A DNA stretch of 63,688 bases, the filler included, from Octopus bimaculoides (taxonomy: Eukaryota), in NCBI RefSeq assembly GCF_001194135.2. It is 8 parts of 6 records of this genome, joined end to end, with 100 filler letters (N's around TTAATTAATTAA, not from the genome) between each part and the next. Parts side by side here need not be neighbours in the genome. Positions count along the whole stretch, not along the records: positions 29,495 to 49,294 come from NC_068987.1; 7 more parts are not named here. One strand, 5' to 3'. The notes under the pieces were generated by a model that made no database searches, was not told where the DNA came from, and worked only from the letters and a program-made list of their open reading frames with translations. Made by a program: the position numbers and the translations under genes. This document shows, piece by piece, positions 29,495 through 49,646 of this stretch (the first letter of the stretch is position 1; every line of letters begins with the position of its first letter).

Positions 29495-29627
29495 TTCAAG
29501 ATATCGTCATTCAGCTCTGGCATTCCGGCAGACACGCTTTCTTGTACAATCTTTTGTAAATACCCTTTGTCTTTCGCTTCAACTGCTTCCTTCAGCTTAC
29601 CTCGTAGGCTATCAGCCGATTTATATC
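29495..29627 (-). CDS. Exon 14, module A2 (partial, runs into gap)
   Basis: tttttcactag|GA TAT...; GYKSADSLRGKLKEAVEAKDKGYLQKIVQESVSAGMPELNDDILK. Confidence 0.8.
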
Positions 29628-31585
29628 CTAGTGAAAAACATTAAACAATGTAAATTGGAAGACATTCTGTCAAACATACATCGATGAAATAGTCAAAGCA
29701 TTATCTTAGATCATTTTAGAAGGAGAGCCACTTATTAGTACGATTACGTTCGTTGCAAATGTAATACACATGTAATTCCATGAACGTTCAATTGAAATAC
29801 TGCCGCAATATTACATATCGTGTAGCCTTTTCGACTGAATCACGTTTACAGAACATTCATACGTTTTGCTTACATAAATTGTCATATGTTAGATATATAT
29901 ACTTTTCTATAGGCAACGATATTTCAAATATCTAACCTCCGCGTCCACCTCCTAAGCTTTCTAGTGCGTCTCTCGCTTTTGACAGATCCCAACTCAATTC
30001 AGGATATGCAACGCCTTCACAGTCTTCAATGATTTGCCTGAGAGCTACTTTGTCTTTCAGTTTTGTCGCTTTTTCTAGCTCATCTCGTAAACTTTCGACG
30101 GTTTTCAAGTCTGGCAAAGGAAGATTATGCACGTTATACTAACTTCGTGTATCAAACACACCAATCATCGGTAAACATAATTATTAATGAAAAGTTTCAA
30201 TAGCCTCATAAAAGAGGCGGTTTCAAATGATGTCTCCATATCATAATAGAAGAATGTATAATATTCTATTAGTTCAATAGGCGTTTGAAAGCAAAATAAA
30301 TGCTATGTACCTTTTGGAGGAGAAATTTTAACGTCTTTCAATAAGTCTCGAGCAACGCTTATGTCTACGTCTAGTTCTGGCATTCCAGCAGCAATGCATT
30401 CGTGAATTACTTTGTCCAATGTATCTTTATCTCCCTGCTTCATAGCAGACTTTAGTTTTCGGCGAAGTGATTCAGGCGTCTTCGTCCCTGACAGAGTATT
30501 TTAACAGCGCAATAAATAAACTTGGAAAAAATTTCTGTATATATCTTTACTGATGTCATGAACACAATACCAAAGTGGAAAAAATAGAAGCAAAAACATC
30601 CGTTTGCAAATATACCCACTTAGATTTTCATGCATAATCACATAGAAACACACAGAAACACACAAGGAACATACGGATAAACACACTCACACACAAACAC
30701 ACAAATACTCTTACACACACACGAACACGCATACAAACACCACGAGAAAACTGGAAGAATGTAACCAGCCCCCTCGTTTTGATGTGTAGTATATATTTGC
30801 ATGTAAGTCAATGTGCAATTTAGTTTAGAGAAAATCTGCACGTAAGTGAAATCAAATATAAGAGTAAGATTGTTTTCTCTGCTCGTATGTATTTGTGGTG
30901 TACATGGATCTGCTTCATTGTATAAAGATATGCCTAACATTTATCGGGGTTGGAATATCCGGAGGCGGGAGCTCCTTCAAGAATTGGTTTCTACGGGGAA
31001 AATAATGATCAAAGGAAGTTGTACCATACAGAGATCACAAATGACCAGAACGTCTAACGATAGGCAGTTCCCAAGAACACGTACTAGCCTCAGTTTTTAC
31101 CGAGGTTCTGGAAACCAAATGTGTATGTATACGAAAGCCCAACTAACCTTTGCCCAATTTCTTAATACCTTCCACTAGCCATCGTCTCTCTGCTGTTATT
31201 AAATGTGAAGAAACATCAAGCAGTATAAATTTAACAATATCCTGTCAAGCACATAGATCATTTGAAACAAGTAACATTTACTAACATAATAAAATCGCAA
31301 CTGAAATATATATGTGGAATAGCTCAAGTTTTAAACATGCATATATGCATACAAGAATCCATCTTCAAAATACAATTCTCGGTGGTAACAATAAATTTTC
31401 GGAAATGTATAGAGAAATTCTTATGATCACTTTTGTAGAAGGTCTTTCATGTTTACAGGATATCTGAATTCGTGTCTAACAGCAGCCTTCGTCGCTTTCT
31501 ATCCAAAGGGTTTTTTAAACACAATATTTATACTATTATTTATAGCTTATATATCTTCTTCAAGATCCAATGTTCCTAAAACAGA

Positions 31586-31618
<33 letters not shown>

Positions 31619-31620
31619 CT

Positions 31621-31660
<40 letters not shown>

Positions 31661-31687
31661 NNNNNNNNNNTGTGTGTGTGTGTGTGT

Positions 31688-31733
<46 letters not shown>

Positions 31734-33426
31734 AGATATACAGACAGACGGACGGACGAGTTGATGGATGGTTGGATGGATGGATGGATGGTTCATTTTA
31801 GTATATGCAATTGCTGAAAATGATTCTACCTCCACGGCCGCCGCCAAGTCTCTCTAATATATCCCGAGCTTTCCGAAGGTCATTACCCAATTCTGCATAT
31901 TCCGCTTTCTCACATTCATGTATGACCTCCTGTATTTTTTTCACATCTTTTCGTTTTCCAGCCATTTCAAGTTGGTCCCGTAAATTATCAGGGGTTCTGA
32001 TGTCTATAAGAATATATATTCAAAAGAAATGTACAGATGCTGAAAATCCGAAACATACTAACATAATTTTAGTCCATTTTAAAATTTACAACAGCTAGGA
32101 ATGACCGTTATTCCTACTACAAACTCTATCAGAGTATCACCTGTTCACCTCTCGCCATGTTTTCAAGAACCGTTTGTTCACTTTTTGTCAAGACTAAGTT
32201 GTTTATTGAAAAGGAACTTTGCTGTCACAGTCATTCTATTTGGAAATAAATACCATCTTACTAGACAATTTCCACAGCATGACCAAAAATAGAATAAGAT
32301 TATATAGCTGCATTGTTTTTCCCGCGAACATTTCCCTTCGTGTTACTACACGAGAAAGAATAAATAACACGACTACCAACGTCATTGTACAAATCTCACC
32401 AAGGAGCAGTTTATTGAAGACAACTTCGAAATTATCAAGAAAAAATTATGAGCTAACTATGGAGCTACAGTATGGTTGGTTGACTGGCTTGAATTAGCAT
32501 TTCAAGCTTTTCAAACCACATTCTGGTGTCTTGAAAAGTGAAGGACACATCGGATAATATAGTCGGCCGAAATACTACTGATCAATCAGAACTTACTCGA
32601 AGTTAATGTACAAGGAACACAGTTTGATGTTTTACATCAGGAGTAAAACACGAATAAATAGCAGGGCAAAAATACAAGGAAGCGATTTGACTCAGTGTAT
32701 ACTACATTGCTTTTTCGCTTTCAAAAATGAAACATTGTTGCTTCCGAAACGTTGATATATACTCTTTTCTATCAGAACTTTATGGCATTCGTACTGTTGC
32801 ACATTGTTTATATTGCATTTATTTATTATCACATTGAAAGAGAACAAAAGCATATTTACTGATATCAAAATTTGAAAGGAAGATATTATTAACCACCATT
32901 ATTAAGCCTGCAAACGGAAGTTCACGTCTTCTTAATAACTACACGAGAAATCACTAAAGCAGTATTATTCAAATTCTGTTTTCCCACTCCCTGTATATCA
33001 ATAAACCAACCCATCTCTCTCTTTCATTATCCCTTTCCTGCATTTGCTCTCTCTCCCTCTTTCTCACACACACTGTCATTGTTACATACTTTGTATGAAA
33101 TAAAATTGTTCTAACCTCCAGTACCACCAGCAAGAATATCCGAAATCCTTCGAGCTTGTTGTATGTCTGAGTCAAGTTCTGGCATACCAGCAGCGACACT
33201 TTGTCGGATAGCTTTAGCCAAAGCATTTTTATCCTTGCTTTCCATAGCACTTCGTAAATTTTCTCGCAGAGAATCAACGGATTTTGTTCCTAATAATGTT
33301 AAATGTTTTTTTTTTACACTTACAACAATAAAGATATATTACTGGACACAATGTCAGTTATTTTTACGGAAAGTTATAACCAATTGAGCTTTTGCCAAAT
33401 AAGTGCTGTTTTGCTGCATGATTAAA

Positions 33427-33479
<53 letters not shown>

Positions 33480-33569
33480 NNNNNNNNNNNNNNNNNNNNN
33501 TGTGTACGTGCGTGCGTGCGTGTGTGTGTGTGCGTGCGTGCGTGTGTGTGTTTGTGTGTTTGTGTTTGC

Positions 33570-33608
<39 letters not shown>

Positions 33609-36600
33609 AGTGACTGATTATAACAATATAATATACCAATATAACGTTGAGTTTTATCATAAATAGCAAAATTAAATGTTGTTAAATGTTTTTCATATCC
33701 AATTAAACTTTGTAAGCTTTCCAGTATATCAAACATTAAATTAGCTAACCTCCAAGACCTCCTCCGAGGCTTTTGAGCGTGTTTCTAGCTTTACGGAGAT
33801 CTGAGCCAAGTTCTGGAAACTCTGCTGCTTCCAATTCTACGATTAGCTTTTCCAATGCATATCTATCCTTCTGCTTTGTGGCCCTTTTCAATCTTCTCCG
33901 AAATGAGTCTGGTGATTTTGATTCTAATGACTTATTTTCTTCAAGTGATTTTAGAACTTCTCTTGCTCTATGAATTCTAGCATCCAGTTCTGGCCTTCCA
34001 ACGCTAATACATTCATTTATAGCATCTTCCAGTCTTTCTTTGTCATTGTCTCTAATTGCTAGATCAATTTTCTCTCGTAAACCATCAACTGAAATAACTC
34101 CTATCGGATAGGAGATGCAACAAAAGTTAAACATTGTCACTTGATTTTCAATTTAATGAAATTTATTCACATTTTTATGGAGGAAATTTCTTTCATTATT
34201 TATATTAAAATTTTCGGGGTAAATGTATAGATTTTAGATGAGTTCTTAACGTTGCTTTCGATTTGATATTGTTTAAACGAAGTAACTGAAGCAGTTCATG
34301 CCATTGAAATATGTTTTGAATGTAATTGTACCAAGAAAAAAATACAGAAAAAGAAACTTATGAAATTAACTTCATCCTTAAAAACAGAACATTGTACAGT
34401 AAAGGACGACATTGATCTTTGGGAGTTTTGTAGTCAACTGAAAAAATGAAAGGTGAAGCAGCACTCTCTCCAAATATTTACTATTCATGCGATACGACTT
34501 TGCATCAATGAGACAGAAATAGACAACAACTATAATTGTTCAGAATGTTCATCAAAAACGTTTGCAAACCTCCATCCCCGCCACCTAAATCTTCTAGGTT
34601 AATACGAGCTCTCCGCAATTCTGAATTCAATTCTGGGTAACCAAGTATTTCACATTCAGCAATGATTTTACTCAGTTCTGGAACATCTTTTTGTTTAATA
34701 GCTTTTGCTAACTGATTGAGTAAAGCAGCTGGACTTTTAACTTCTGCAAGTACAATACATATATTGCGAGCCAAAATATCGAAAAATCCCACAAATAATT
34801 AATTTTAGATTAGTAAATACAATTGTTTCCGATTAAAGTATATATTTCAGTAAACCGACACATTTTTGTATGCAATTATTATTTGTGATAGTTATATTTA
34901 CAATTGCCAGGGTAGAAGACTAATTCTTTGCGAAAATTGAAGTTTGATATCCTTCGTAGATTCAAGATGGAAAGTCTCTGTCTAAAAGGTCAGTCAGTAA
35001 ATATTTAGTGATATAGATAGGAGGGCTGGAGTATCATTGATTCTTTGACGGCAATATATAATATATAACGAATTTTTAACTAGGGATATAAAGAAATATG
35101 TGTCTTATAGTGTTATTCTTTTGATTCTTTCATGCGAAAAAACAAAACGAAAACAAATGTATAAAACATAATGTAAATACAACAAAATTATTAGGAACAA
35201 TTTTCGGGTGAAAATCTAACCTCCACTGCCACCTCCAAGAATATCTGATACACTTCGAGCTTGTTGTATATCGGCTTCTAACTCTGTCATACCGGCAGCT
35301 ACACAATTTCTGATAGTTTTATCCAAATGTCTTTTATCATTTGATTTCATAACAGCTTTCAGATTTTCACGCAACGCGAATGGCGATATACTTCCTATAG
35401 ATCAAATTAAACAATAATGTAAACTAAGTCATTAGAGTACGGATATATTTATAATTCTCTTATCACTGATATTCGAAAGAGATTTAGAAACGATAATACT
35501 ATAATGATAGCAACATTACACTATTGTTTATTCTTAAAACCTAAATTACGAAAATAATACCATATGATGAGGTTTCTAACTTTCAAAATTTTCAAACTAT
35601 ACATGTATTATATTCCAAAACAATATATGAAAGCTTGAAAAAATTAGATTTGTTTTAGTTTTAGAAATACTTTAGAAATAACTTATATATGTAACTCATA
35701 AGAAGAGGGACTTTCTTTGCTAACCTCCTCGACCATACCCTAAACTTTCTAAAGCATCACGAGCGGCACTAAGATCTCTACCCAGTTCTGGATAGAGTGA
35801 TTTCTCACACTCAGATATTAGTTTTTCCAAGGAATACTTGTCTCTTTCTGCAATGGCTTGTGCTATCTCGTCTCGTAGTATCTCAGACGGTTTTGGTTCT
35901 AGAAAAAGAAAATACAAACAAATACAATCTGCAAGTGAAAATAGCGGTTTCCTTCCTCACTATTTTTGGCTGCGTATACGTGTATATATGTGTGTGTGTG
36001 CATAACTACATGTGCGTTTGATGACGCATGCACTGAAAATACACTAGATCTACAGCCAACATTGTTTACGAAGCGTCCTTATGTATATGTGCACTCCTTT
36101 AAAAACCCTGTGTTGGTGCACTCAGTTTCATATATGAACTTGTGTGACAACTCAAAAAATTTAATCATTCAGTATAACTTGCAGTGGAACACAGCAACTT
36201 TTACACTTTAAATGAAAGAACGGCAGCCATACTGAGTTTGCTGCCAGGAAAATTGATAAACGTGGATGTTTTATTAGAGCGCGGAATACTACAATATTTG
36301 CATTGAGAAGTCCCCCCACCCCATATAGACATACGGTGCTAAGAGCACATACATATATCATAGCAGACAAGAACCGTCTGGTATAGTCACCAGAACTACC
36401 AGATCACATGATTTCAGCATACTGCCTTTCTCGGTGGCTTACCTCCTCCCCTAAACCAGTCAAATTTCCCCGCCATCAATATATAGAATAACAGTGACTT
36501 TTCTGTCATTGGTATTGCAAAGAACCAGTAAGCTAATAAAAAAGTATTAGCGATGGAAGCAGTATCAATACTAAAAAGCAGATATATGTTTATGCTATTA

Positions 36601-37590
36601 GGACCGTACATTTATATGAGAGAACCTCTCAAGACGAACGTCACAGCATTCGATGCTCTAATAAAAGATTCGAATTTAGTAGGATATAAAGGCCGCTTTT
36701 CGGTATTAATACAACTTTCATCGTTAATATTTAGTTTTATATAAGAGGGTTGTCTATTGCAACATCAGTGACTTTATAGTTGGCTGCGAGCTTTGGCTGA
36801 TATAAAGGTCACCGAACCACTGGAGAAGCGTAGCACGTTAAAATCACATGATCTGGTAGTTCCGACGCACACACCAGACCGTTCTTGTCTGCTAAAATAT
36901 AGGTCAGTGTTCTTAGTACCATACGTCTATATGAAAGGTCTTCTCAGGGCGAATGCAGTTGTATTCGGCACTCTAATACAGCATCCACGTTTAGTCTAAT
37001 ATAAAGAATACCTTTCGGCATTAATATTGTTTCCGTCATTAATATTTACAAATTGATAAATGTATGCATCTAGGTCCGGTAGAGACATGTATCTGTCATG
37101 TCTTTACGTATATTGCCATATATGTCTGTGACTCATCCGAATTGTTGCCAGAGGTACTGTATCTGTGAATATCCATGTATTTCTATGACTGCATGTCAAA
37201 TATATACGAATGCACCTATGTAAATATATACATAACATATATAATATGAGTGTGCCTAAGTAAATTTCTATGTACACGCCTAAGGAGGTCCAAGATATAT
37301 GTTTATGCGTATGTATAGATACATATATTCTAAAATTTGGACAGACGTAACACAGGAACAAACCTGAAAATTCACACACACAAGACAGGACTTTATAAAT
37401 TACTCGTCATGATATATATATATGTATGTATTTATGAGTTGCGGGAAACTGCTCTTGCAATCCATAAATTAGGAAACTCTAGAGTAGCAAGAGACTACAT
37501 ATGTGTGTGTGTATGTATGTATGTATGTATGTATGTATGTATGTATGTATGCATGTGTGTATGTATGCATGCATGTACGCATGCATGTAC

Positions 37591-37628
<38 letters not shown>

Positions 37629-40103
37629 GGTTCATTGATCATGAAATACAAGCAATTTTTAGGATACGATGTGTTCGATTATATTTCCTACGATCCATAT
37701 GCTAGGAGCAAATGTGTTATCGTTCCATGTTTCTTTCAGTCGTTCCACTACGATATTTTAACAAACTACAAGTGCAGAACAAGTGTAGATAAAGTTTTAG
37801 TCTTATTCAATATACCTTACACGTTATTAGCAATAATTACTGTTACATAAGAAGATACCTTTTAAAGAGATTACATAACCAAATGAACAGAGATTGCATA
37901 ACAATCTTAAAGCTTCAAGTTATATAACAGAAGTGAGATGGTGCTTCGGTAACAACAAATATAACAGTAGTGTAAATATGGGTCGAAGAATTTATTTTGA
38001 TATTAATCTGGTGAAGGTAGAGATTTTTTCACATCATAGTAAAGAGAATTAGTCATTTTTTTCTTTCTCATTAACTCTGTGTTATTAAGTAGAAACAAAG
38101 CTACATATCAGATATCAGGTCACTATAAACCATTGCTACATTTTATTACTCCTATTTGACGTCTTGATTATAATTACCAATCTTCACACATACATCATTC
38201 AATTCAACTATACAATCCTATACAGGTACCATATATGTCAACGAACATAAATATAACTCCTAACATTAACATATACACATTCATTTATGTGATATCTAGT
38301 TAGATGATCCCTATGGAATTACTGGTATCGCATATTTATTCTTTAGTTACAGGTGTTTCAATAATATATAAGTTAAATAAATCAAATCGGAAAATATAAA
38401 TATAGGAAAAGATTATGAATCATTGAATATATAATATTGATTGTATTATTCATTAGGGACGAAAGACTAAATTAACATGTGTAAAACTTAGATGAATTCA
38501 TTTATATATAGAGACAGAAGATTAGATGAGAGGAGGATTCATTTCTTACAGGGAGAGTTTCCTCTAGAAATGCTAATAACAGAAATGGTAATGATGACGA
38601 CTTTTGAGTTTCAGTTGGCAAGATCATGTTAGAAGTTAAATTTGTCAATAAGTTTGTATAACAGACAGTTGTCTGGTCGAGAATGTAAAACAATACTAAG
38701 ATTGTGTATCATAGTACAGGTGGTTAGGACAGCGGACTCGCGGTCGGAGGATCGCGGTTTCGATTCCCAGGCCGGGCATTGTATATGTTTATTGAGCGAA
38801 AATACCTACAAAGCTCCACGAGGCTCCAGCAGGTGTACTCTTTGGCCCCAACTTTCTCTTATTCTTTCTTCCTGCTTCTTGAGTAATGCTGGGGGGTACA
38901 CATACGCCATAGAAACCGGGAAACCAGGTCCACGAGCCTGGCTAGGCTTTAAAAGGGGCGCATAATAAAATCATTGTACAGAGTCTCATAAATTAACTGG
39001 GATGGGCATCTCTAGAGTAGCGTCAAAGAAAACCAAAATGATTAGAGAAAGAACAAAGTTGAAAAGGAGGTGGAAAGAAGAGAGTGAGACAGGAATAAAT
39101 TGAAAGTGTAAGAACAATAGCTAGTCTCGTATGAGGGAATGAGTGTATATAAATAGACTTAAAAGGATGAGAGGCTTTTGTAATTTGCAGTAATAGTGGT
39201 GGTATATGAAGATGTAAAATAGTCTTATAATACTTTATAATTAAATTCATAATTAAAAATAATGGTAAAAGATTAATGGTAAAAAAAAAAACTAATATTA
39301 ACCAGAACAGTAAAAGTGTACATAAATATACATACGTACATCTATACATATATCTGTACAAAAATATAAATATAGAAACACATATATTCCTAGATATAGT
39401 CAGGCATACATCCACAAACACACCAATATATACACGCACATACTTATAGGTATATATATAAGCACAAACATCTGCTCTGACTCCTAGCCATATACCTAAA
39501 TGCGCATGTAAATGAATTTGTAAAGTCATGCAGACGTGTGTATATACATGTATCTCGTAATCAATTAAATATTTCATGAATACAGCATTATGAAATAGTT
39601 GTTAGAAGCACAATAAAAAGAAGTGTAAAACAAAGGATATTTAGAATCGAGAAAATAAGTTGATGCATAAAGTTGAGGTGATAGGACAGTACGACAACCA
39701 CTTGGAGATGTGGTAGAGATGAGTAACGAAATTCATGCAGCATAATTCATATGTGTATATGCATATGCTTGCATTTATTTATTCCAATACTGTTTATGAG
39801 TAAGGTAAACAGAATTTTAAGAATGTTTTATTAATCCGATATCTGCATCTAGTTGTTAGCTCATTATGCTTATCAATGAGATCCGCTGAAAATTTCAGAT
39901 GAATTCAGCAGTATGTTGGAGTTCTTAGATCTAAGAACTCCACCACACTGCTGATCACGAATAAATCGTATTTTATCTCCTGTCTTTCTCATATTCATTT
40001 AATACAGTAGTACCTCGGTTTACGAACGCCTCTGATTACAAATAAATCGTACTTTATATATATATATATATCTAGCTATCTAACTATATATATATAAACA
40101 CAT

Positions 40104-40149
<46 letters not shown>

Positions 40150-42350
40150 NNNNNNNNNNNNNNNNNNNNNNNNNNNNNNNNNNNNNNNNNNNNNNNNNNN
40201 NNNNNNNNNNNNNNNNNNNNNNNNNNNNNNNNNNNNNNNNNNNNNNNNNNNNNNNNNNNNNNNNNNNNNNNNNNNNNNNNNNNNNNNNNNNNNNNNNNNN
40301 NNNNNNNNNNNNNNNNNNNNNNNNNNNNNNNNNNNNNNNNNNNNNNNNNNNNNNNNNNNNNNNNNNNNNNNNNNNNNATATATATATATATACGGTAAAA
40401 AAAGAAAATGGAGGGGATACAAAAATGATATACATCAGCCGGTAGACATTCTATTGTCTATTTATTCTAAAACATAAGGAAGTATTATAAGAATGTATAC
40501 ACATGCAAAGACTGTGTGCTACACAAATATGTAGTAGTAATACATAAAAGAATAAAATATTAAAAGATTAAGAGATCAGTTCCTTACGGCCGTTTCTGCC
40601 AAGAGGCCACGATATCCTCCATGCTACCTCCATCTCTTCAGTGTTGGGATGGGTAGATAGAGTTTGGCTGTTGAGAGTGCCTCTTGGCTTCTTCAGAGGG
40701 TCTAAATAGCCTAAATAGTTAGGATAGCCGAAACATACAAGAGTCAGTTACCAATAGGTACAGTATATTTTTTCTTATTGAAGAGGGCATAAGAAGAATA
40801 CGACCAAAAGTTAGTGTAAGAGGAATAAAATTTCGCAAAATGGATTAGGTATAGGAAAGGGAAACAAGTCATAGACTTCAAGTGTTGCCTTCCAAGATTC
40901 ATGTTATTTTGTCCAGTGGTGGATAGGTGGATACAGTTTTTCTAAGGAGGAATTTTTAAGGAAGGGTAAATTTGGGCAGTGGTTCTTATTTTGCTTACTT
41001 ATAAATACACGTTATGTTTACAGTGATGGGTTTGAAACTATGGTCCGTGTTTCGGTGGTGGAAGTTTATATGTAGGATGCCAGCTGGTACTAAAGAGAGT
41101 ATGGCACCAGGTGGTGTTCATGCTCGCTATTTTTCGATCAACAAGTCCCTGAATCCTTGTGTGCAGTGGGATAGGGGTTATGGTCAGTCCTGCAACCTAA
41201 TTGGTCAGCTATTGTTTTGAAAACTATGACGCGATTCCGGTTCGTTGAGGGCTAACAGATAACACAAAAACAGATCAGATAAATAAATAAGTAAATAACT
41301 AAATGAGTAAGTAAATAAACAAATGAGTAAGTAAATAAATAAATGACTAAGTAAATAAATAAATAAGTAAATAAATAAATAAAAGCCGTGGCCACTATGC
41401 ACAAGTAGAAGAGCAAAATGACATTCAAACTAGATTAAATTAAAGTAAAGTAAAACAAGTAAAAAAAATAAATCAGTATGTGAGTGAGTGCAATAATTAA
41501 AGCAATACGATTAAGGGGATATGATCTTAAGGGACAGCATAAGAAAATAACTTATATATAAAGCACGATTTATTCGATATCAGAGTTGTGCGAAAACCGA
41601 GGTACTACTGTATATTCATACATGTCTACATTTATGCTCGTCTTCCACAAAACCTTATACATTTTCTTCTCTTTTTTACTTCTTCTCCTCCCTTTGTTCC
41701 TATTCTCTGCCATTCAGATTTGTTTTCCATTATTCATTTACTTGATTTTCCTCTCTCCGCTTCTTCATTATTATCTCTGCGTTTTACCTTCCCCTTACAT
41801 ACCTACGCTTTACCTCTCTATGTCCTTTTTCCTCTTCCTCTTTGCTTAATGGGCTGGCTCTCTAGAACCATTCCGACAGTTGCTATATATAGGAGACCTT
41901 TCATTTACTGTTTTTATTTGAAAATGCTTGACTGAAAGTAGTTTTGTAAGGGCTATGTTACATAACTACAAGAAACATGTGTGTTAAATGTGTATTGAAT
42001 GCGCTTGTGAGTGAGTGTATCAACGAGACAAGATGATAGTTGAATAGAAGTGCGTGAATGTTTGTATATATGCGCATGTAAACGAAAGGCATGGATGGGT
42101 AGGGAGAGGAGTAGTCCAAGGAAGGTATGTGTTTGTGTGAAAGCTTTGTTAGTGTATTGAGGGTTTGCCTGTAAGTGTAGAGATATTGAAAGATTAGATA
42201 AGAGGAGTGGGGATGGAATGGAGGACTAAAATGGGAGGTGCAGGTGGATGTGGGGTAAGTAGATGGGAGGAGAAGCAGAAGAAAGATGTTTGTGGTGAAA
42301 TGCAAGTTATTAAAATTGCATTAGTGAATTTATACGAAAAGACGTGTACA

Positions 42351-42408
<58 letters not shown>

Positions 42409-44435
42409 CTCCTGTGCTTTCTGAAAACGAGTGGAGGGGTTTGCAGCTCTTTACATATTTGTAAATACAAAACTTGTTGCAATACATAACTTATTGATTC
42501 AATGAAAGTTACTGAGATATGTTTCAAAGTTTTTATATATTTGAGTAAGTCTACCATAATACATTGCTTGCAAATAATGAAAATAAAAATAGAGTTATAT
42601 TAAATGGTAATAAATATGCTGTCAAATGAATATAAACAGAAATGAAATATAAATGAAAATGCCTAGAAACATAGATATATTTAGATGGTCTTGGAAACTA
42701 TATATAAGCAACTAGAGCCTTTTTTGCCGTCACTTGTGTGGAGATGAGAAGTGGGTATTAAATAATTATGTCTAAAATATATTGCAGTAAATTGGATTGT
42801 TATTCTAACAATAACTGGACAGAAAAAATTTCGATGTCATTTAATCATTTTGCATTGCACAACTTACCTGAAATTTATTTTATTTATTTATTTATTTATT
42901 ATAATCATATATTCTGTTTATAATATTCTAACAGAATATGATTTTCATTTCAGCACATGAAAGTAAAAACCAACATCAGTTGAGACCTAAAGGAAAAGGA
43001 ATTTATAATTCAAATATGTCTTCTTTATTTCACCATGTCTTCAAATGCTATATTTCTTTGAATTAGAGAGGTCATATATCAATTCTCGAAATTCAATTGA
43101 AGTTGCATGCCATGCATATAGAATGAGATCGTCATAAGAGTAATTTGAAAATCTAACCTGTACTGTTTTGTCTCATATCTTCAAGAACATTTCTTGCACG
43201 TTCTATGTCAGAATCTAGTTCTGGCAGTCCAGCAGTGACACATTCATTAATTACTCTGTCTAATTTGCCTTTGTCACCTTCCCTCATTGCGTTTCTGAGA
43301 TTGGTTCGCAGAGAGTCAGGTGTTTTATTTCCTAACAATGAAATACATATGACAGTGAGAATTTCATGAAATTGTGCGTGTTTATGAAACCATGCCATGC
43401 AGAAAATCGAGAAATACGTATCCCGTAATTGATTCTTTTGTGATAATCTAATTCATGCACATTTATATTTCAACTTTAAAAGAAATATTCACTAGATCAT
43501 TCAATAAAACAGTGCATGCACTAAGTGAATGAAAGATGAACTTCTATTTAGATATGAATCACACATCTAAAATGTACAATCCCGTAAAATGGAAAAATCG
43601 CTATATTCGAAGAAACATTGAACTAAATTTAACTCGAAACGCCATAAACACATAGGAAAGGAAAAAAAAACAGAAGATAAGTGAGAATAATTTCTTACGC
43701 GAAAATAAATGTATGAAAGAATGAAACTAGGAAATGTTAGAAACTGCTAATGTTAGTTATAAATTGACATAAGAAACAACTATTTCACACCGGCAATATT
43801 TAGCAATTTTTTATGACAACATAATATAGAAAACCTTGCTGCTGACCTCCACGACCACCACCAAGAGACTCTAGAGTATCCCTAGCTTTACAAAGATCAG
43901 CTGCTAGTTCTGGATAACCAGCTTCTTCACTGTCTGCAATGGCTTTCTGCAGTTCACCAATATCTTTCTGACGAATAGCACGAGCCAACTGACTCTGCAA
44001 TGTATCTGAAGGTACTACATCTAGTAAAATCGAAGAAAGAAGTAATTAAATATTGATTTATAACATCGGCACCACGCATTTTGGGGGAGGATAAAATTGA
44101 TTGAATAAATTGCAGTATTCCACTATTATTGCATTTTTAATGATCCTAGAAGGGTGAAACTATCACAGTGGGATTTAAACTCAGAACGTAAATGTTTGTA
44201 ACTCTATACCTTAATGTATTTCATCCAACTCCCTAACGGTGAAATATGAATAAAATCTATATATACTTATTATTGCAAATAAATGTTTATTTCTAAATAT
44301 CTAAAAAGATAAAACGTCTGTGATGTAAATATTAACGTTAAAATTTATCTGGAATACAAAGACTAAAAAGCTATAGCAATCAAGAATATCATGAAATTTT
44401 AAATCCTTATATTCTACAAAGTATACTGTGAGAAT

Positions 44436-44469
<34 letters not shown>

Positions 44470-47400
44470 TTTCTCTCTCTCTCTCTCTCTCCTTTTCTCT
44501 CTCTATCTTCTCTTTACAAGCTTAAATGTCTATAGAGGGACAGCGAAAGTCTTTCGCATTACATCGTGTGTTAATTTATCTTGCATCAAGCTGCCTAATG
44601 AAATTATATATAATGAAACCCGTGATTTATATAGTAACAGGTTTGAAACTATGAGCATAAGATATCGTAACATTTTACATTTGCAAGTGCAACATCGTAA
44701 CGTTCATCTTTATCTGAGAATACTTTCTTGATCATAAAAAACCCAAAAGTAAGTAACACATCTCATAAATGTAAATTTTAGGTTTGAGAGCTTATGTCAA
44801 AGAAGTAGATAGTTAGCAGATACCAACAATTTCATTAAGATTGGTATGTTGTATATTCTCAGATAGCAATTAATAATGTTTGATGTGATAATATAATACC
44901 TTTAAACATGTAAAATTTGCCAACGATCCACTTAAAGAATCTAAAATGCACTGCCTTTAATGTACTTCAGCATTCAAGTAAAATATATATTTTGAACAAC
45001 CTCTCAAGAAATACGCAATATCTTAGGTCAATAATCACGATCAAATATCAGCTGATTAGTCTATTGTGTAACTGTACAGTAGAATAAAGGCTAACCTCCA
45101 GAGCCACCACCAAGAATATCTGATACACGTCTTGCTTGTTGTATATCAACATCCAGTCCTGGCATGCCGGCTGCTACACTTTCTTGGATAACTCTATCCA
45201 ATTCACTTTTATCTTTAGTTTTCATTGCATCTTCAAGTTTGTCTCTTAACATATCTGCAGATATTGTTCCTGAGTGTAGATAATAATTCAAGTAAGAATA
45301 AGTGATAAAATATACTGGAAATATAAGAATTGCCTACTCTTAGTACAAAGAGTATTAATATATAACATTTCTTCAAAACTTCAAATAAATTATTTTTGCA
45401 TAACATATTTCATATAGAGCATGCGGACATATTAACGTATTCGTTTAATATATATATGTATGGTTTTGAAATAATACTGTATAAAGAGACTGTAATTTTG
45501 GCAAAGACAGTATTAAATAAGAAAAATCTGCATAAGGCGTTTTGCAATCATACAACTTATTCTATGGTAACTGCAACTACTTATACAGTAAAATTGATAT
45601 TTTTTTAAATAGGCTAAAGCCATGTTCATATTTCTCGGGCATTTTAAATTCATTTTGTGGGACTAAACCTCGAAGACTGTCGTATCAGGATATGTAATAT
45701 AATCGCCCTTGACTCTCATTAATGCGATTAAATATTGGTATCCCATTAAGACACAAACACTCTAATGTTTGTAACTAAAGGAAAATAAGTTATTGTGTCT
45801 CACCATACTTTACATCTTGTTCTACAGAATACACAATGAATTGTGTAATGGGAACACTAAATTTTGTATTGCAGGATACAGTCTGTGACACGAAAGCATA
45901 TTAATTTCTTGTAATAAGTTTTGAAATGCTTCAATGAAACAGGTATTTACCAAAAATTTATATTTGAACAATTCTATGTTACTTTGCCAATCTTTTAGCC
46001 AACTGACAATCGACAAGTTTTAAAACATATTGCATGAGAACGATGTAAGTTAGAAAATTGGGAAAAAGATGAAATTACTATATATAAATATATATATATA
46101 TATAAATAATGTTCAAATTTTATACGACCGCTAAAAAAAATAGACAGACAGACATATATACATACAGACAAACAGACAAACAGATAGATAGATGTAACCC
46201 ACAAGTTTAAAGACTGCGTCGCAGCAATATAAATTATACTATATATATTTCGAATCACACAAAATGCTAACCTCCACATTCTCCACTCAGGCTCTTCAGA
46301 GTATCTCTGGCTTGCCGTAAATCAGAACTCAGTTCTGGATATTTGGCTTCTTCACATTCGCGGATTAGTTTCTCAAGCAGTGGCCTGTTTCTTTCTTTGG
46401 TTGCTTTCTTTAGTTCATTACGTAAGGAAACGGGCGATCTCGAACCTGACAAGAGATAGTTGCTAAGATTAAATAAATGCTCGTCTTTGTCCTGTTGTTT
46501 TTCTTGTTTTAGATATTAGATTGTTTTTGTTTTTGGTTATTTCCCATGAATATGAGCGTTATTATGATAGGACTTCAAATGTAGTTGTTTCATTTTACTA
46601 CGATAGAACTAGAATATTGCGTTAAATGTTTAATTATAACGATTACAAAATTGTTTACTTAATTTTTTCTTTCGTTTTTTATCTTCTGCTTATATTTAAA
46701 TAGAAAAATTGAGGATGAGATGCATGCGTACGTGCTCGCACATGCATGTGTATGTGTGCGCGCGTATGTGTATAACCTTTTATCTTTTGCTTGTTTCAGT
46801 CATTATACTGCGGCCATCCAGGGACACCGCCTTGAAAAACTTTAGTCGGACGACACGAGCATTTTGTTTAAGGTTGGAACTTAATCTATCGGACTCTTTT
46901 GCCGAGCTGCTAATTTACAGGGAAGTAAACACACTAACACCTATTGTCAAGCTGTGTGAGTCAAGACAAACGCAGACGTATCGATTTATTTTTCTACAAG
47001 CATCTGTAAATGTAATTGCCCTACTGAATGCTACCGCGAAAATATGTACGCATATCATAGTAATTTGATGTGTAGGTGTTTCATTTCTTGTCCATTGCTT
47101 TACTATTACACTAAGTTTAGCGCTCTACAATACAGTTACATTACCTGCTACCAATATCAACAAATATGATTAATAATGGTCAAATTTCCAACAACCACCT
47201 ACTGACATATTTTGACCATTTATTTCTTTATTTCTGCTATTCTTATATCTGTTTCTAGAAACGAACTGAATTTTTGTAGCTCATCTTTCGTAAAGATAAT
47301 TCTTTCAAATTAAGTAATAATCCGCTCACATGAGAATTATGTAGAATGAATAATGCAAATATCACTAATATCATTTTGTGTTGGATTTTCAATGTATTGT

Positions 47401-47612
47401 GCTCTGGTTACGTATTATAGCTTATATCATAGCGCATTTTACATGCGGTTTTAAGAGTTTAACACGGTAAACTATATTGAACTCTAATATAACTGGCTAC
47501 CTATTATAATGATATATGTGTATACATACTTGTATGTGTATGTGTAAATTATATGTATTATTTATATAGTACGTAATATATACATATATATTACTAGACC
47601 AAATATTATAAA

Positions 47613-47646
<34 letters not shown>

Positions 47647-48279
47647 TAGACCAAATATTATAAAAGGGTATTATTTTGAACTGAGAAAAAGATACGGCGA
47701 GCGATTGAGAGATGAGCAATATATACACACATACATGTGTGTGTAATATATACATACACACATATTTTTGTCTGTGTTTCCAGTGTTGTCCGAGCTTTAC
47801 AAGCTCATCTAAAAGCTCTGGATTACCAGCTTCGCTGTTTGCAATGACGTTTTGGAGTTGATCAACATTTTTCAACCGATTAACACGAGTCAATCGACTA
47901 TGTAATATTTTTAAATGTACTACATGCCAGATGCATAAAAGGAAGTGTGTGGATGTATATGTATAGGTATCTGCATGCACAGGAACATAAATAAATAAAA
48001 ACAGAAAGCTTCCTAATTATCAGGGCTGCTTTTATCAAGCAGAAGCTATATGGAAGGAAGATAAGATCCGTACGCTGCAGTATGTTAATTTGACTCACTG
48101 ACCTGGTTGGTGCTTCTCACGTAAGTCGTGGAGTAATTCTCTTGCTTTCTGCACATCTGTGTCTAGTTCTTGCAGTCCAGCTGCTACACATTCGTTTACT
48201 GCACTTTCTAACTGGGCTTTATCTCCATGTTGCATAACGTTTGATAGCATTTGTCGTAATGCTTCTGGTGATTTACTTC
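29495..48279 (-). CDS. Multi-exon gene segment encoding at least 15 tandem ~58-aa helical modules (about 860 aa visible); start and end not established
   Basis: All 14 exons have AG acceptors and the 13 complete ones have GT donors, all phase 1, so they splice into one open frame (2445 nt for the 13 complete exons). Shared pattern: LR..L..A....D...L...I.E(C/S)..AG.PEL..D(I/L)..AR..L. Confidence 0.88.
29937..30110 (-). CDS. Exon 13, module B1 (174 nt)
   Basis: ctttgccag| ... GGAG|gttaga; DLKTVESLRDELEKATKLKDKVALRQIIEDCEGVAYPELSWDLSKARDALESLGGGRG. Confidence 0.9.
30311..30487 (-). CDS. Exon 12, module A1 (177 nt)
   Basis: ctctgtcag| ... AAAG|gtacat; GTKTPESLRRKLKSAMKQGDKDTLDKVIHECIAAGMPELDVDISVARDLLKDVKISPPK; not in the ORF track. 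Confidence 0.88.
31830..32003 (-). CDS. Exon 11, module B2 (174 nt)
   Basis: ttcttatag| ... GGAG|gtagaa (weak donor); DIRTPDNLRDQLEMAGKRKDVKKIQEVIHECEKAEYAELGNDLRKARDILERLGGGRG. Confidence 0.82.
33116..33289 (-). CDS. Exon 10, module A2 (174 nt)
   Basis: cattattag| ... GGAG|gttaga; GTKSVDSLRENLRSAMESKDKNALAKAIRQSVAAGMPELDSDIQQARRISDILAGGTG. Confidence 0.88.
33750..34100 (-). CDS. Exon 9, fused modules A1+B1 (351 nt = 177+174)
   Basis: atccgatag| ... GGAG|gttagc; GVISVDGLREKIDLAI...LEENKSL/ESKSPDSFRRRL...LKSLGGGLG. Confidence 0.9.
34570..34743 (-). CDS. Exon 8, module B2 (174 nt)
   Basis: tacttgcag| ... GGAG|gtttgc; EVKSPAALLNQLAKAIKQKDVPELSKIIAECEILGYPELNSELRRARINLEDLGGGDG. Confidence 0.88.
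35221..35394 (-). CDS. Exon 7, module A2 (174 nt)
   Basis: gatctatag| ... GGAG|gttaga; GSISPFALRENLKAVMKSNDKRHLDKTIRNCVAAGMTELEADIQQARSVSDILGGGSG. Confidence 0.88.
35725..35898 (-). CDS. Exon 6, module B1 (174 nt)
   Basis: tttttctag| ... GGAG|gttagc; EPKPSEILRDEIAQAIAERDKYSLEKLISECEKSLYPELGRDLSAARDALESLGYGRG. Confidence 0.9.
36258..36992. repeat. Intronic inverted repeat (arms 36258-36443 and 36807-36992) with a third, more diverged tandem copy between them
   Basis: gaactaccagatca versus tgatctggtagttc, aaacgtggatg versus catccacgttt, and agcagacaagaac versus gttcttgtctgct are exact reverse complements. Confidence 0.8.
38714..38966 (+). mobile_element. tRNA-headed SINE
   Basis: gtggttaggacagcggactcgcgg...ggtttcgattccc...tttattgagcgaaaa; the head is shared with the 16.4-16.8 kb SINE. 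Confidence 0.75.
40005..41610. mobile_element. Tigger/pogo-like MITE with ~55-bp TIRs and TA target sites, inflated by internal insertions
   Basis: TA|cagtagtacctcggtttacgaac ... gtgcgaaaaccgaggtactactg|TA. Confidence 0.7.
43158..43331 (-). CDS. Exon 5, module A1 (174 nt)
   Basis: cattgttag| ... ACAG|gttaga; GNKTPDSLRTNLRNAMREGDKGKLDRVINECVTAGLPELDSDIERARNVLEDMRQNST. Confidence 0.9.
43847..44020 (-). CDS. Exon 4, module B2 (174 nt)
   Basis: ttttactag| ... GGAG|gtcagc; DVVPSDTLQSQLARAIRQKDIGELQKAIADSEEAGYPELAADLCKARDTLESLGGGRG. Confidence 0.9.
45096..45269 (-). CDS. Exon 3, module A2 (174 nt)
   Basis: tacactcag| ... GGAG|gttagc; GTISADMLRDKLEDAMKTKDKSELDRVIQESVAAGMPGLDVDIQQARRVSDILGGGSG. 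Confidence 0.9.
46272..46445 (-). CDS. Exon 2, module B1 (174 nt)
   Basis: tcttgtcag| ... GGAG|gttagc; GSRSPVSLRNELKKATKERNRPLLEKLIRECEEAKYPELSSDLRQARDTLKSLSGECG. Confidence 0.9.
47777..47925 (-). pseudogene. Decayed B2-type pseudo-exon
   Basis: Aligns to exon 4 at DNA level (ATGTAGTAC..., GAGCTT-GTAAAGCT versus GATCTTTGTAAAGCT). The acceptor position reads GC instead of AG, there is a 1-bp deletion, and the 3' end and donor are lost. Confidence 0.82.
48103..48279 (-). CDS. Exon 1 of the visible array, module A1 (177 nt)
   Basis: attgatcag| ... CCAG|gtcagt; GSKSPEALRQMLSNVMQHGDKAQLESAVNECVAAGLQELDTDVQKARELLHDLREKHQP; not in the ORF track. Confidence 0.88.
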
Positions 48280-48869
48280 CTGATCAATAAAGTGTGGAAA
48301 ATTCCCAAGACTTTAGATATAATTTTACCAAAATAATCTTTCTGTAAAGAAGCATGCAGATGAGATAACAGAAATGCATGCTGGTGACTCCATGCCTTTA
48401 TACACAAAGTTGACTCACTTTTAAAATTTCCATATAGCTAACTGAAGCATTGATCTCTTGACCATAAGCTTTAGAAATAACTACACTGTGTATATAGAAT
48501 TCAAGAGTAAACTTCATATGCGCAGAAATCAAAATGTAGGGTATGCATTTTTTTTTTAATGCTCGTTAAAACATTTTAATTAAAAAGTGTTGATTTAAAT
48601 ATTTAGTATTATAATTTTCTCTCCCCTCTCGCGAGCTCTCTATTTCTTTTCTCTCTCACCCTGTCACTCTCTCTCCACACACACACACACACACAGACAC
48701 ACACATATACACACACACACACACATACACACACACACACACACATACACACGCACATCATATATCAAAAGTTGACAGTGTACACTGAGTTTCAGCCCAT
48801 CCGACTAACCCTTGCCAACGTGGAGTACAGTCGTAAAGTGATGATAATGATCATGAATATAATATATAT

Positions 48870-49293
48870 ATATATATATATATATACAAATAATATGTAA
48901 GTATATGCATATATACCCACATGTATGTACACACTTACATCTACATGTATATATAGATGCATATCTGGGTACAGGGCGTCACAAAAAAAAACGTGGACAA
49001 AATGAGAACAGAGTACTGAAAACACACAGGCCACATAGAGAACATTTCCTTCATCAGCTGCCACCATTCTAAAACTAAGTGTTTCGAAGAGTAGGGCAGG
49101 ACGCATTGCTAGAATGGCTCTTCCCGCGGAAACAAATTAAATTTGTAATGCGGAAAAATATAGTGGCGAACAGAAAACACGACAGGAGAACGAAACAATG
49201 AAAATAAACAAGAAGGGCTAGTAGGGTCAGAAGTGAAAAAAATATATATGTATGCAGAACGCTGTGATGTGACGAACGGAAAAGATAAGAAGA
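48870..49293 (-). mobile_element. Dispersed ~430-bp element carrying a permuted hammerhead-like motif (copy C host)
   Basis: Colinear and similar to 60226-60660; its 3' tail GACGCCCTGTACCCAGATATGC is also similar to the 10.28-kb tail. Confidence 0.75.
49051..49123 (-). ncRNA. Permuted hammerhead-like motif, copy C
   Basis: GAAGAG-CCATTCTA-GCAAT-GCGTC-CTGCCC-TA-CTCTTC-GAAACAC-TTAGTTT-TAGAATGG-T-GGCAG-CTGATGA. Confidence 0.65.
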
Positions 49294-49646
49294 ANNNNNN
49301 NNNNNNNNNNNNNNNNNNNNNNNNNNNNNNNNNNNNNNTTAATTAATTAANNNNNNNNNNNNNNNNNNNNNNNNNNNNNNNNNNNNNNNNNNNNTTTTGT
49401 GAATGAAACAAACTAGATCCTAAATAAAAAATGAATGCTTAATATGACAAATTTTCAGATTTTTTACGTCATTTTAAAAAGGAGCTGATTCTGTGTCTCA
49501 AACTAACCAGATCCAAGTATAGTGCATACCATCCTCCACAATTTGCTACTCATATGAAGTACATATGTATTTTAACAATTTCTATCAAATACACTCTCTT
49601 TCTTGAGCATAAAAAATCCTCTTCCTTGATGACAATAACTTATATA

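What the first reader, a model, noticed from the sequence alone, without database searches (positions are those of the whole stretch)
29495..48279. Perfect four-module higher-order register A1-B1-A2-B2 repeated 3.75 times
Seen, in transcript order: A1 (exons 1, 5, 9a, 12; CV/CI..G, non-Gly tails HQP/NST/KSL/PPK), B1 (2, 6, 9b, 13; LEKLI/LRQII..CE), A2 (3, 7, 10, 14; V(A/S)AGM, with IQQAR..SDILGGG in the three complete copies) and B2 (4, 8, 11; KD(I/V)..(L/I)). There are no exceptions, despite introns ranging from 200 to 7259 nt. Inference: the gene grew by duplicating a single exon to a pair, the pair to a quartet, and the quartet into an array, and modules pack with class-specific neighbours, as in titin or nebulin super-repeats.
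Basis: partly seen in the sequence, partly recalled or inferred. Interest (0 to 1): 0.72.

Follow-up and report, generated by a model that had tools for sequence, protein, structure and literature searches.

The report
Octopus repeat-exon array, alternating modules
This is a run of near-identical-length exons, each coding one small three-helix module, in the tail of a giant octopus cytoskeletal (KY/hillarin-like) gene; two module types strictly alternate, while the claimed four-module pattern is real only for one of the two types and only locally.

Summary
The minus strand holds 14 exons coding 15 modules. Exons are 174 or 177 nt (one fused exon of 351 nt), all with AG/GT splice sites and all in phase 1. 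All three N gaps are intronic. Each 58-aa module is predicted as three helices and has no Pfam, PDB-sequence or fold match.

Exons e1-e5 are 85-95% identical to part of Octopus vulgaris CAI9725887.1, which has a transglutaminase-like core, three KY-type Ig domains and a module array. Exons e6-e9 recur in order in another octopus (exons 92-96% identical, introns 85%, dN/dS 0.36). The array is therefore a real, constrained coding sequence.

- **A/B alternation:** solid. Bootstrap is 93-95%, three columns alternate perfectly, and a more distant cephalopod contig shows it too.
- **A1/A2 alternation:** the best of 35 partitions (p=0.029) but weakly bootstrapped.
- **B1/B2:** not supported. Rank is 3-4 of 35 and B1 monophyly gets 2-3%.
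- **"No exceptions":** fails at DNA level. A decayed copy of e4 lies in intron 1.
- **Uniform quartet duplication:** not supported. Synonymous divergence differs between classes and no intron homology survives.

Verdict: a new example of a known kind of structure, of moderate interest.

The parts
48103..48279 (-). Exon e1, 177 nt, phase 1-1. Module type A1, with a non-Gly tail ('REKHQP').
   Evidence: Splice sites and frame. Module HMM 91.9 bits. 85% identical to O. vulgaris P0154 residues 1175-1233.
47777..47925 (-). Decayed relic module (pseudo-exon) in intron 1. It is a copy of exon e4 (B2 type) whose last third is lost.
   Evidence: hmmsearch i-E 2e-4. nhmmer E 5.8e-8. 71-74% nt identity to e4, starting exactly at e4's 5' exon boundary.
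46272..46445 (-). Exon e2, 174 nt.
   Evidence: 95% identical to P0154 residues 1234-1291.
45096..45269 (-). Exon e3, 174 nt. Module type A2 ('VAAGM', 'IQQARRVSDILGGG').
   Evidence: 90% identical to P0154 residues 1292-1349.
43847..44020 (-). Exon e4, 174 nt.
   Evidence: 91% identical to P0154 residues 1350-1407.
43158..43331 (-). Exon e5, 174 nt. Module type A1 (tail 'RQNST').
   Evidence: 90% identical to P0154 residues 1408-1465.
35899..43157 (-). Intron 5, 7259 nt. It contains the 228-N assembly gap (40150-40377), microsatellites and dispersed-repeat fragments. No module was detected in it.
35725..35898 (-). Exon e6, 174 nt.
   Evidence: Ortholog in L003 is 92% nt identical.
35221..35394 (-). 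Exon e7, 174 nt. Module type A2.
   Evidence: Ortholog in L003 is 95% nt identical.
34570..34743 (-). Exon e8, 174 nt.
   Evidence: Ortholog in L003 is 96% nt identical.
33750..34100 (-). Exon e9, 351 nt. Two modules (A1 + B) are fused in one exon with no intron between them.
   Evidence: two HMM domains, 81.0 and 89.5 bits. The first half is orthologous in L003 (93% nt).
33116..33289 (-). Exon e10, 174 nt. Module type A2.
31830..32003 (-). Exon e11, 174 nt.
30311..30487 (-). Exon e12, 177 nt. Module type A1 (tail 'KISPPK').
29937..30110 (-). Exon e13, 174 nt.
29495..29627 (-). Exon e14. Module type A2 ('VSAGM'). It is cut off by the piece's edge after 44 codons.
   Evidence: 68.2 bits, HMM positions 1-43.

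Best explanation
The window is a 19.8-kb slice of the repeat array that forms the tail of a very large octopus gene of the KY / hillarin / LTD-1 family. These are cytoskeleton-associated proteins with a transglutaminase-like core and KY-type Ig domains.

**Shown**
- Each 174-nt, phase-1/phase-1 exon codes one 58-aa module, predicted as three helices.
- Modules are mostly joined by Gly-rich linkers (GGGxGG).
- Two module types strictly alternate. A has V/I at column 32, L/M/R at 36 and I/V at 43. B has E, Y/F and L at those columns.
- The exons are under purifying selection.

**Inferred**
- The A-B pair is the old, conserved unit. It is sometimes coded by one exon.
- The array grew by tandem duplication of exons or exon pairs through unequal crossing-over. 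The symmetric phase keeps every such product in frame, and would also permit cassette splicing.
- In this stretch, every second A module has lost the Gly linker (A1) and the others keep a tight 'IQQAR..SDILGGG' signature (A2). This gives a local four-module period.
- The B modules do not form two lineages. The A2 exons have been kept similar to one another, by gene conversion or by younger age.
- The protein's tail is a long, flexible string of small helical bundles that serves as a spacer or scaffold.
- The window species is probably O. bimaculoides.
For: **Gene structure**
- Exon lengths, splice sites and phase.
- All gaps are intronic.

**Module**
- The AlphaFold2 quartet model has 12 helices, three per module, at mean pLDDT 82. 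The single-module model has pLDDT 81.6.

**Gene identity**
- An exhaustive profile search gave 232 hits.
- O. vulgaris CAI9725887.1 (P0154, 2069 aa) carries Transglut_core and three Ig-like_KY domains, followed by at least 15 modules. These include 85-95% orthologs of e1-e5 in the same order.
- On O. bimaculoides chromosome CM046607.1, the first module lies 8.8 kb downstream of the 'kyphoscoliosis peptidase-like, partial' gene.
- About 150 kb further along the same strand, L001 carries more modules inside a gene whose product is 5242 aa.
- Haliotis ltd-1-like proteins carry 2-3 modules after the KY Ig domains.

**Constraint**
- L003, from another octopus, has e6-e7-e8-e9 in the same order. Exons are 92-96% identical and introns 85%, there are no exon indels, and dN/dS is 0.36.

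**Alternation**
- Within the window.
- In P0154 and in the distant contig L005.
- Fused A-B exons occur in e9 and in several ORFs from other data.

**Local period of four**
-.

**Non-uniform history**
-.
Against: - Physical linkage of this window to the KY-like N-terminus is not shown in the window's own genome. It rests on the O. vulgaris gene model and on O. bimaculoides map positions. The window has no nucleotide overlap with L001 or L002.
- NCBI annotates the O. bimaculoides KY-like part and the 5242-aa gene separately.
- The O. vulgaris model jumps from the e5 ortholog to a module that lies in L001. It contains none of e6-e14. Their inclusion in mRNA is therefore not demonstrated.
- No transcript data were available.
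- The e5-e6 adjacency crosses a 228-N scaffold gap.
- Any function for the tail is inference only.
Confidence: 0.78

Rival explanations
1. A single exon became a pair, the pair a quartet, and the quartet was copied en bloc into an array. The result is four true module lineages (A1, B1, A2, B2), each packing against class-specific neighbours as in titin or nebulin super-repeats.
For: - The positional A1/A2 partition is the best of 35.
- Three of the four B1 modules share 'LEKLI', and all three B2 modules share 'KD[IV]'.
- By score, modules outside the window fall in the same order, some by small margins: u3-u4-u5 in O. vulgaris, and 9231-10043-11681-13003 in L001.
Against: - B1 monophyly has 2-3% bootstrap support, and B1/B2 ranks 3-4 of 35 partitions.
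- Within-class relationships are not congruent between classes. Synonymous divergence is 0.44-0.59 for the three complete A2 exons and 0.78-0.91 for B1, across the same quartet pairs.
- No intron homology links the quartets.
- A single-exon copy of e4 lies out of register.
- The O. vulgaris tail modules d3 and d5, and the contig L005, do not follow the register.
- The structure model gives no confident inter-module packing (pTM 0.49).
Confidence: 0.2
2. Only the two-module A-B repeat is real. The apparent period of four is a by-product of sporadic loss of the Gly hinge in some A modules, homogenisation of a few A2 exons, and motifs chosen after seeing the order.
For: - B classes are not significant.
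- L005 shows strict A/B alternation but no regular A1/A2 pattern.
- With 8 A modules the smallest attainable p is 0.029.
- The A2 exons look homogenised.
Against: - The A1/A2 partition remains the best of 35 when the tail columns are removed.
- Four A1 modules fall at exactly every fourth position.
- The same order recurs in two independent stretches of the octopus array.
Confidence: 0.2
3. The array is a gene of its own, separate from the KY-like gene upstream. The O. vulgaris model that joins them would then be an annotation artefact.
For: NCBI annotates O. bimaculoides with a 'kyphoscoliosis peptidase-like, partial' gene (806 aa) and, downstream on the same strand, a separate gene with a 5242-aa product.
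Against: - An older O. bimaculoides model (P0098) and the O. vulgaris model both run from the KY domains into the first module.
- Haliotis ltd-1-like proteins carry KY domains and modules in one protein.
- The 806-aa model is flagged partial.
Confidence: 0.15
4. The repeats are not coding. They would be a satellite, a transposon-derived array, or a dead pseudogene array that happens to have open frames.
For: None beyond the tandem repetition. One copy, the relic in intron 1, is indeed dead.
Against: - All 14 exons have canonical AG/GT sites and the same phase.
- Compared with another species, exons are 7-11 points more conserved than introns, carry no indels, and give dN/dS of 0.36.
- e1-e5 are part of an annotated protein.
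Confidence: 0.02

Closest known systems
KY (kyphoscoliosis peptidase) / hillarin / LTD-1 / Cyk3 family of transglutaminase-like cytoskeletal proteins
   Same: The O. vulgaris protein that contains orthologs of e1-e5 has the family's Transglut_core and three Ig-like_KY domains. Haliotis 'ltd-1-like' proteins carry the same helical module after those domains. Family members are linked to the actin or septin cytoskeleton and to cytokinesis (PMC3718969).
   Different: The window holds only the tail array, with none of the defining domains. An array of tens of modules is not a described feature of KY, hillarin or LTD-1, as far as I know (own knowledge). Pfam has no model for the module.
Titin and nebulin super-repeats (higher-order periodicity in tandem-module muscle proteins)
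   Same: Tandem modules of one fold, with one module per exon. Similarity is higher at a fixed lag than between neighbours: identity is about 0.35 at odd lags, about 0.45 at lags 2, 6 and 10, and about 0.50 at lags 4, 8 and 12.
   Different: The robust period is 2, not 4. The period of four is carried by one module type and is local. No periodic binding partner is known. The modules are 58-aa helical units joined by Gly-rich linkers, not Ig/Fn3 domains or 35-aa nebulin repeats.
Helical repeat in protist myosin tails and other protist proteins (Rhodelphis marinus EP00736_P004893; Breviolum minutum symbB.v1.2.008618)
   Same: The module profile hits these proteins with 8-16 stretches each, at E of 1e-10 to 1e-23. 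They share the pattern L..AI...D...L..AI.EAE.AGL...L..A...L.
   Different: The protist repeats run on without Gly linkers and are shorter, about 40-45 aa. Homology versus convergence of amphipathic helices was not settled here.
Spectrin-type and other small three-helix repeats
   Same: Three helices per unit, in tandem arrays, in cytoskeletal proteins.
   Different: There is no Pfam spectrin hit and no significant fold match. The best Foldseek E-values are 0.31 for the quartet and 1.3 for one module. The unit is 58 aa rather than 106 aa, and units are separated by flexible Gly linkers instead of a continuous helix.

Membership tests
KY / hillarin / LTD-1 transglutaminase-like family | Transglutaminase-like core domain (Pfam PF01841) | tested here: inconclusive
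   The domain is absent from the window piece, which is only the tail array. It is present in O. vulgaris P0154, which contains orthologs of e1-e5 (25.8 bits against a cut-off of 23), and in O. bimaculoides P0098 (27.2 bits). Linkage to the window's own genome is not shown.
KY / hillarin / LTD-1 transglutaminase-like family | KY-type immunoglobulin-like domains (Pfam PF23265) | tested here: inconclusive
   There are three stretches in P0154 (E 2e-64) and in P0098 (E 1e-66), and none in the window piece. The same caveat on linkage applies.
Tandem exon-duplication array (one module per symmetric exon) | Each repeat unit is coded by its own exon, of constant length and with the same intron phase at both ends | tested here: met
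   13 of 14 exons code a single module of 174 or 177 nt. One exon (351 nt) holds two modules. All are phase 1-1 with AG/GT sites.
Super-repeat protein (titin / nebulin kind) | Modules at the same position of successive super-repeats are more alike than modules within a super-repeat, and form position-specific clades | tested here: inconclusive
   The feature is met for A versus B (93-95% bootstrap). It is met weakly for A1 versus A2 (best of 35 partitions, bootstrap 25-40%). It is not met for B1 versus B2 (B1 monophyly 2-3%)..
Super-repeat protein (titin / nebulin kind) | The super-repeat is conserved in orthologs and along the array | tested here: inconclusive
   The order e6-e9 is conserved in another octopus. 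B1-A2-B2(-A1) order is seen by score, some margins small, in two other octopus stretches. It is not seen in the O. vulgaris tail modules or in the more distant contig L005.
Super-repeat protein (titin / nebulin kind) | The period matches a periodic binding partner or filament | not testable with these tools
   No partner is known, and no interaction or localisation data were available.
Spectrin repeat | Match to the spectrin profile or fold (a 106-aa three-helix unit) | tested here: not met
   No Pfam hit, no PDB sequence hit other than designed helical proteins, and no significant Foldseek hit.

The most novel reading that the evidence does not exclude
The 58-aa three-helix module is an uncurated, ancient eukaryotic domain, shared by mollusc KY/hillarin-like proteins and protist myosin tails. 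Octopuses have expanded it to roughly 90-100 exon-modules spread over about 150 kb. This would yield a protein of at least 5000-6000 aa whose alternating A/B units, and a local four-unit super-repeat, act as a ruler, spring or multivalent scaffold in muscle or neurons. The symmetric exons would allow tissue-specific length variants.
Probability: 0.15. Interest if true: 0.6.

Novelty: new member of a known kind. Interest (0 to 1): 0.35.

Why it matters
**Annotation.** A large, constrained coding array is poorly annotated in octopus genomes. The models in three species include different subsets of exons. The 5242-aa O. bimaculoides product was not returned when the protein collection was searched with P0001, which lies within that gene's annotated span. 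The module itself has no curated family.

**Repeat evolution.** The array is a clean natural case for studying how exon arrays grow. It combines strict two-type alternation, occasional intron-less pairs, a decayed out-of-register copy, and signs of homogenisation limited to one module type.

**Biology.** If the tail belongs to a KY/hillarin-like protein, it points to an unexplored giant cytoskeletal protein in cephalopods.

**Limits.** This does not overturn any concept.

Tried and rejected
**Family and structure searches**
- Pfam on the modules gave nothing above threshold.
- The word-index protein search with e1-e8 gave no hit. With P0001 it returned only P0001 itself and one short ORF. The 5242-aa O. 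bimaculoides product was not returned.
- The PDB sequence profile search hit only designed helical proteins, at E of 0.013 or worse.
- Foldseek against the PDB found nothing significant, for the quartet or the single module.

**Look-ups of the window's own sequence**
- Exact look-ups of window ORFs in the assembly and protein collections found none on record. I could not place the window on a public contig or confirm the species directly.
- P0154 is not in the gene-position index.

**Phylogeny**
- A count of disjoint-residue diagnostic columns proved uninformative, because variable columns score trivially.
- An extended tree of 35 modules from four sources was unresolved, with most support values below 40%.

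**Other**
- tRNA and Rfam scans of the piece found nothing.
- Literature searches for KY in cephalopods found nothing relevant.
- I considered and rejected a non-coding satellite or transposon array.


Full report
**What is in the sequence**

The piece 29495-49294 is AT-rich (GC 0.24-0.39) and full of microsatellites. Its minus strand carries a series of short open frames with one recurring 58-aa pattern.

Reading the codons around each frame and fixing the boundaries gives 14 exons:
- Twelve are 174 or 177 nt.
- One (e9) is 351 nt and holds two modules.
- The last (e14) is cut by the piece's edge.

Every exon is preceded by AG and followed by GT. Every one starts and ends in phase 1.

Spliced together, the exons give an uninterrupted 859-aa reading frame of 15 modules. 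The consensus is GxKSPDxLRxxLxxAxKxKDKxxLxKxIxECxxAGxPELxxDxxxARxxLxxLGGGxG.

**The assembly gaps**

All three N runs fall inside introns: intron 11, intron 9 and intron 5. No reading frame depends on them.

The first two gaps have TG repeats on both sides, as expected for one unread microsatellite. The third, of 228 N, has (CA)n on one side and (AT)n on the other.

The adjacency of e5 and e6 therefore depends on a scaffold join that I could not check. So does the continuity of the register at that point. A six-frame profile scan and a nucleotide profile scan found no further intact module in the readable part of any intron.

**Is it a real gene?**

Yes. An exhaustive profile search of 1.84 billion representative proteins gave 232 hits. 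Most are single-exon ORFs from read assemblies.

A few full-length proteins identify the gene:
- Octopus vulgaris CAI9725887.1 (P0154, 2069 aa) has a transglutaminase-like core and three KY-type Ig-like domains.
- These are followed by a K/E-rich stretch and at least 15 modules.
- Its residues 1175-1465 are 85-95% identical to e1-e5, in the same order.

In O. bimaculoides (GCA_001194135.2, chromosome CM046607.1):
- The gene annotated 'kyphoscoliosis peptidase-like, partial' is followed, 8.8 kb downstream on the same strand, by the first module.
- About 150 kb further on, locus L001 carries more modules. One is the ortholog of the module that follows e5 in the O. vulgaris model. L001 lies inside a gene whose product is 5242 aa.
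- At 58 aa per module, 5242 aa corresponds to about 90 modules. This figure is inference.

The window shares no nucleotide sequence with L001 or L002. Its divergence from O. vulgaris matches that of the O. bimaculoides modules, so it is probably another part of the same array. That too is inference.

**Are e6-e14 coding?**

The O. vulgaris model does not include e6-e14, so I tested them separately. A 2.1-kb contig from another octopus data set (L003, SRR11869391) aligns with window 35927-33928 at 86.5% identity. It carries e6, e7, e8 and the start of e9 in the same order.

- Exons are 92-96% identical and introns 85%.
- Exons have no indels, while the introns have 7-25 gap columns each.
- dN/dS is 0.045/0.126 = 0.36.

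These exons predate the species split and are under purifying selection.

**The module**

AlphaFold2 predicts three helices per module:
- The quartet model has 12 helices at mean pLDDT 82.
- The single-module model has pLDDT 81.6.
- In the quartet model the linkers are the least confident parts, and pTM is only 0.49. The relative placement of modules is therefore not defined.

Nothing known matches the module:
- Pfam gives no hit.
- The PDB sequence search finds only designed helical proteins, at weak E-values.
- Foldseek against the PDB finds nothing significant.

The same sequence pattern occurs in Haliotis 'ltd-1-like' proteins after their KY Ig domains. It also occurs, in longer linker-less runs, in protist proteins, including myosin tails of Rhodelphis and Breviolum. 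I did not settle whether the protist repeats are homologous or convergent.

**The register: period 2**

Two module types strictly alternate.
- Mean identity is about 0.35 at odd lags and 0.45-0.50 at even lags.
- Columns 32, 36 and 43 (V/I, L/M/R, I/V against E, Y/F, L) alternate without exception over 15 modules.
- The A|B split has 93-95% bootstrap support on protein and on nucleotides.
- The chance of perfect alternation of 8 A and 7 B is 1 in 6435.

The alternation also holds outside the window.
- In the O. vulgaris protein, three B modules are followed by twelve alternating ones.
- In L005, a 20-kb stretch of a more distant cephalopod contig, four B modules are followed by twelve alternating ones.
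- Five of the six two-module ORFs from other data run A then B, as does e9 in the window. Two of them lie in L005.

The A-B pair is therefore the old unit.

**The register: period 4**

The A modules support a period of four.
- The positional split A1 (e1, e5, e9a, e12) against A2 (e3, e7, e10, e14) is the best of the 35 possible 4+4 splits. This holds by identity and by BLOSUM score, on protein and on nucleotides, with or without the tail columns (p=0.029, the minimum attainable).
- NJ trees recover both groups, but with only 25-40% bootstrap. The three complete A2 exons reach 94% on nucleotides.

The B modules do not support it.
- The B1/B2 split ranks third or fourth of 35 (p=0.06-0.14).
- B1 monophyly has 2-3% support. 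B1 falls into e2+e9b and e6+e13, with the B2 modules among them.
- A tree of 35 modules from four sources is unresolved.

Outside the window the picture is mixed.
- By score, three modules just upstream in O. vulgaris fall as B1-A2-B2, and four in L001 as B1-A2-B2-A1, in register though some by small margins.
- The O. vulgaris tail modules do not follow the register. In L005 only one of six A modules lacks the Gly tail.

The period of four is thus a local feature of the octopus array, carried mainly by whether an A module keeps its Gly-rich linker.

**History of the array**

A clean quartet-by-quartet duplication predicts equal divergence of all four classes between the same quartets. It also predicts congruent within-class trees. 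Neither is seen.
- The proportion of synonymous differences is 0.44-0.59 among e3, e7 and e10.
- It is 0.78-0.91, which is saturated, among the B1 exons.
- The closest pairs differ from class to class.
- Self-comparison of the piece finds similarity only within exons, never in introns. Similarity between A2 exons runs about 5 nt past the donor site.

Either the A2 exons are younger or they have been homogenised by gene conversion.

A decayed copy of e4 lies in intron 1 at 47925-47777.
- It is 71-74% identical to e4, starting exactly at e4's 5' boundary.
- Its last third is lost.
- Only the closest A2 exon pairs are as similar to each other as it is to e4.
- It sits between an A1 and a B1 module, out of register.

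Single-exon duplication therefore also occurs here, and copies that land out of register can die.

**Function**

Nothing here tests function. Relatives of the N-terminal part (Drosophila hillarin, C. elegans LTD-1, yeast Cyk3) are tied to septins, actin-like patterns and cytokinesis (PMC3718969).

From my own knowledge, mouse KY is a Z-disc protein whose loss causes muscular dystrophy with kyphoscoliosis.

The most economical reading of the tail is a long flexible string of small helical bundles acting as a spacer or scaffold. Most modules begin with Ser or Thr, often followed by Pro. This may be a helix cap or a phosphorylation site.

The uniform symmetric phase means that any subset of exons could be spliced in frame. 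No transcript data were available to test this.

**Verdict**

- The two-type alternation is solid and conserved.
- The four-type register is half supported: the A modules yes, the B modules no.
- 'No exceptions' fails at the DNA level.

This is a new, poorly annotated example of a known kind of structure, an exon-duplication repeat array with some higher-order periodicity. It is built from a module that no curated library describes.

Noticed in passing
window 47777-47925, minus strand (intron 1): Decayed copy of exon e4. It is 71-74% nt identical, starting exactly at the exon's 5' boundary, and its last third is lost. Only the closest A2 exon pairs are as similar to each other.
   Followed up: yes
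window 38720-38780, plus strand (intron 5): A tRNA-like stretch (…GGTTAGGACAGCGGACTCGCGGTCGGAGGATCGCGGTTTCGATTCCCAGGCCGGGC…) lies inside a 107-aa chance ORF. It looks like the head of a tRNA-derived SINE. ARAGORN does not call it a tRNA.
   Followed up: partly
window 36257-37048 (intron 5): Dispersed repeat copies: 36993-36823 matches 36257-36432 in inverted orientation (74% over 176 nt), and 37048-36897 matches 36733-36582 (68%). They are probably transposon fragments.
   Followed up: no
window 39905-39954, and 41553-41613 versus 40002-40062: A 50-nt near-perfect palindrome (92%), and a 61-nt inverted pair (87%) that flanks the 228-N gap.
   Followed up: no
L001 (O. bimaculoides CM046607.1 38695447-38718637, reversed): NCBI annotates a 192-aa product (XP_052825468.1, three modules) inside a gene whose longest product is 5242 aa. 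That long product was not returned when the protein collection was searched with P0001, which lies within the gene's annotated span. Gene models for this region differ between O. bimaculoides, O. sinensis and O. vulgaris.
   Followed up: partly
L005 (ENA ERZ21867824 ctg115097l 61972-82361, reversed): A more distant cephalopod contig with 16 modules in 20 kb: four B-type modules followed by twelve strictly alternating A/B. Two A-B pairs are each coded by one exon (15365/15539 and 19455/19632), and one module is degenerate (14339).
   Followed up: partly
P0144 and P0087 (hits): Two hits are probably spurious. They are short-period repeat proteins ('SDDISKARSDIKSQ', 'LDTDTQKARATLKEELE') that match only the 'D..KAR' part of the profile.
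   Followed up: no
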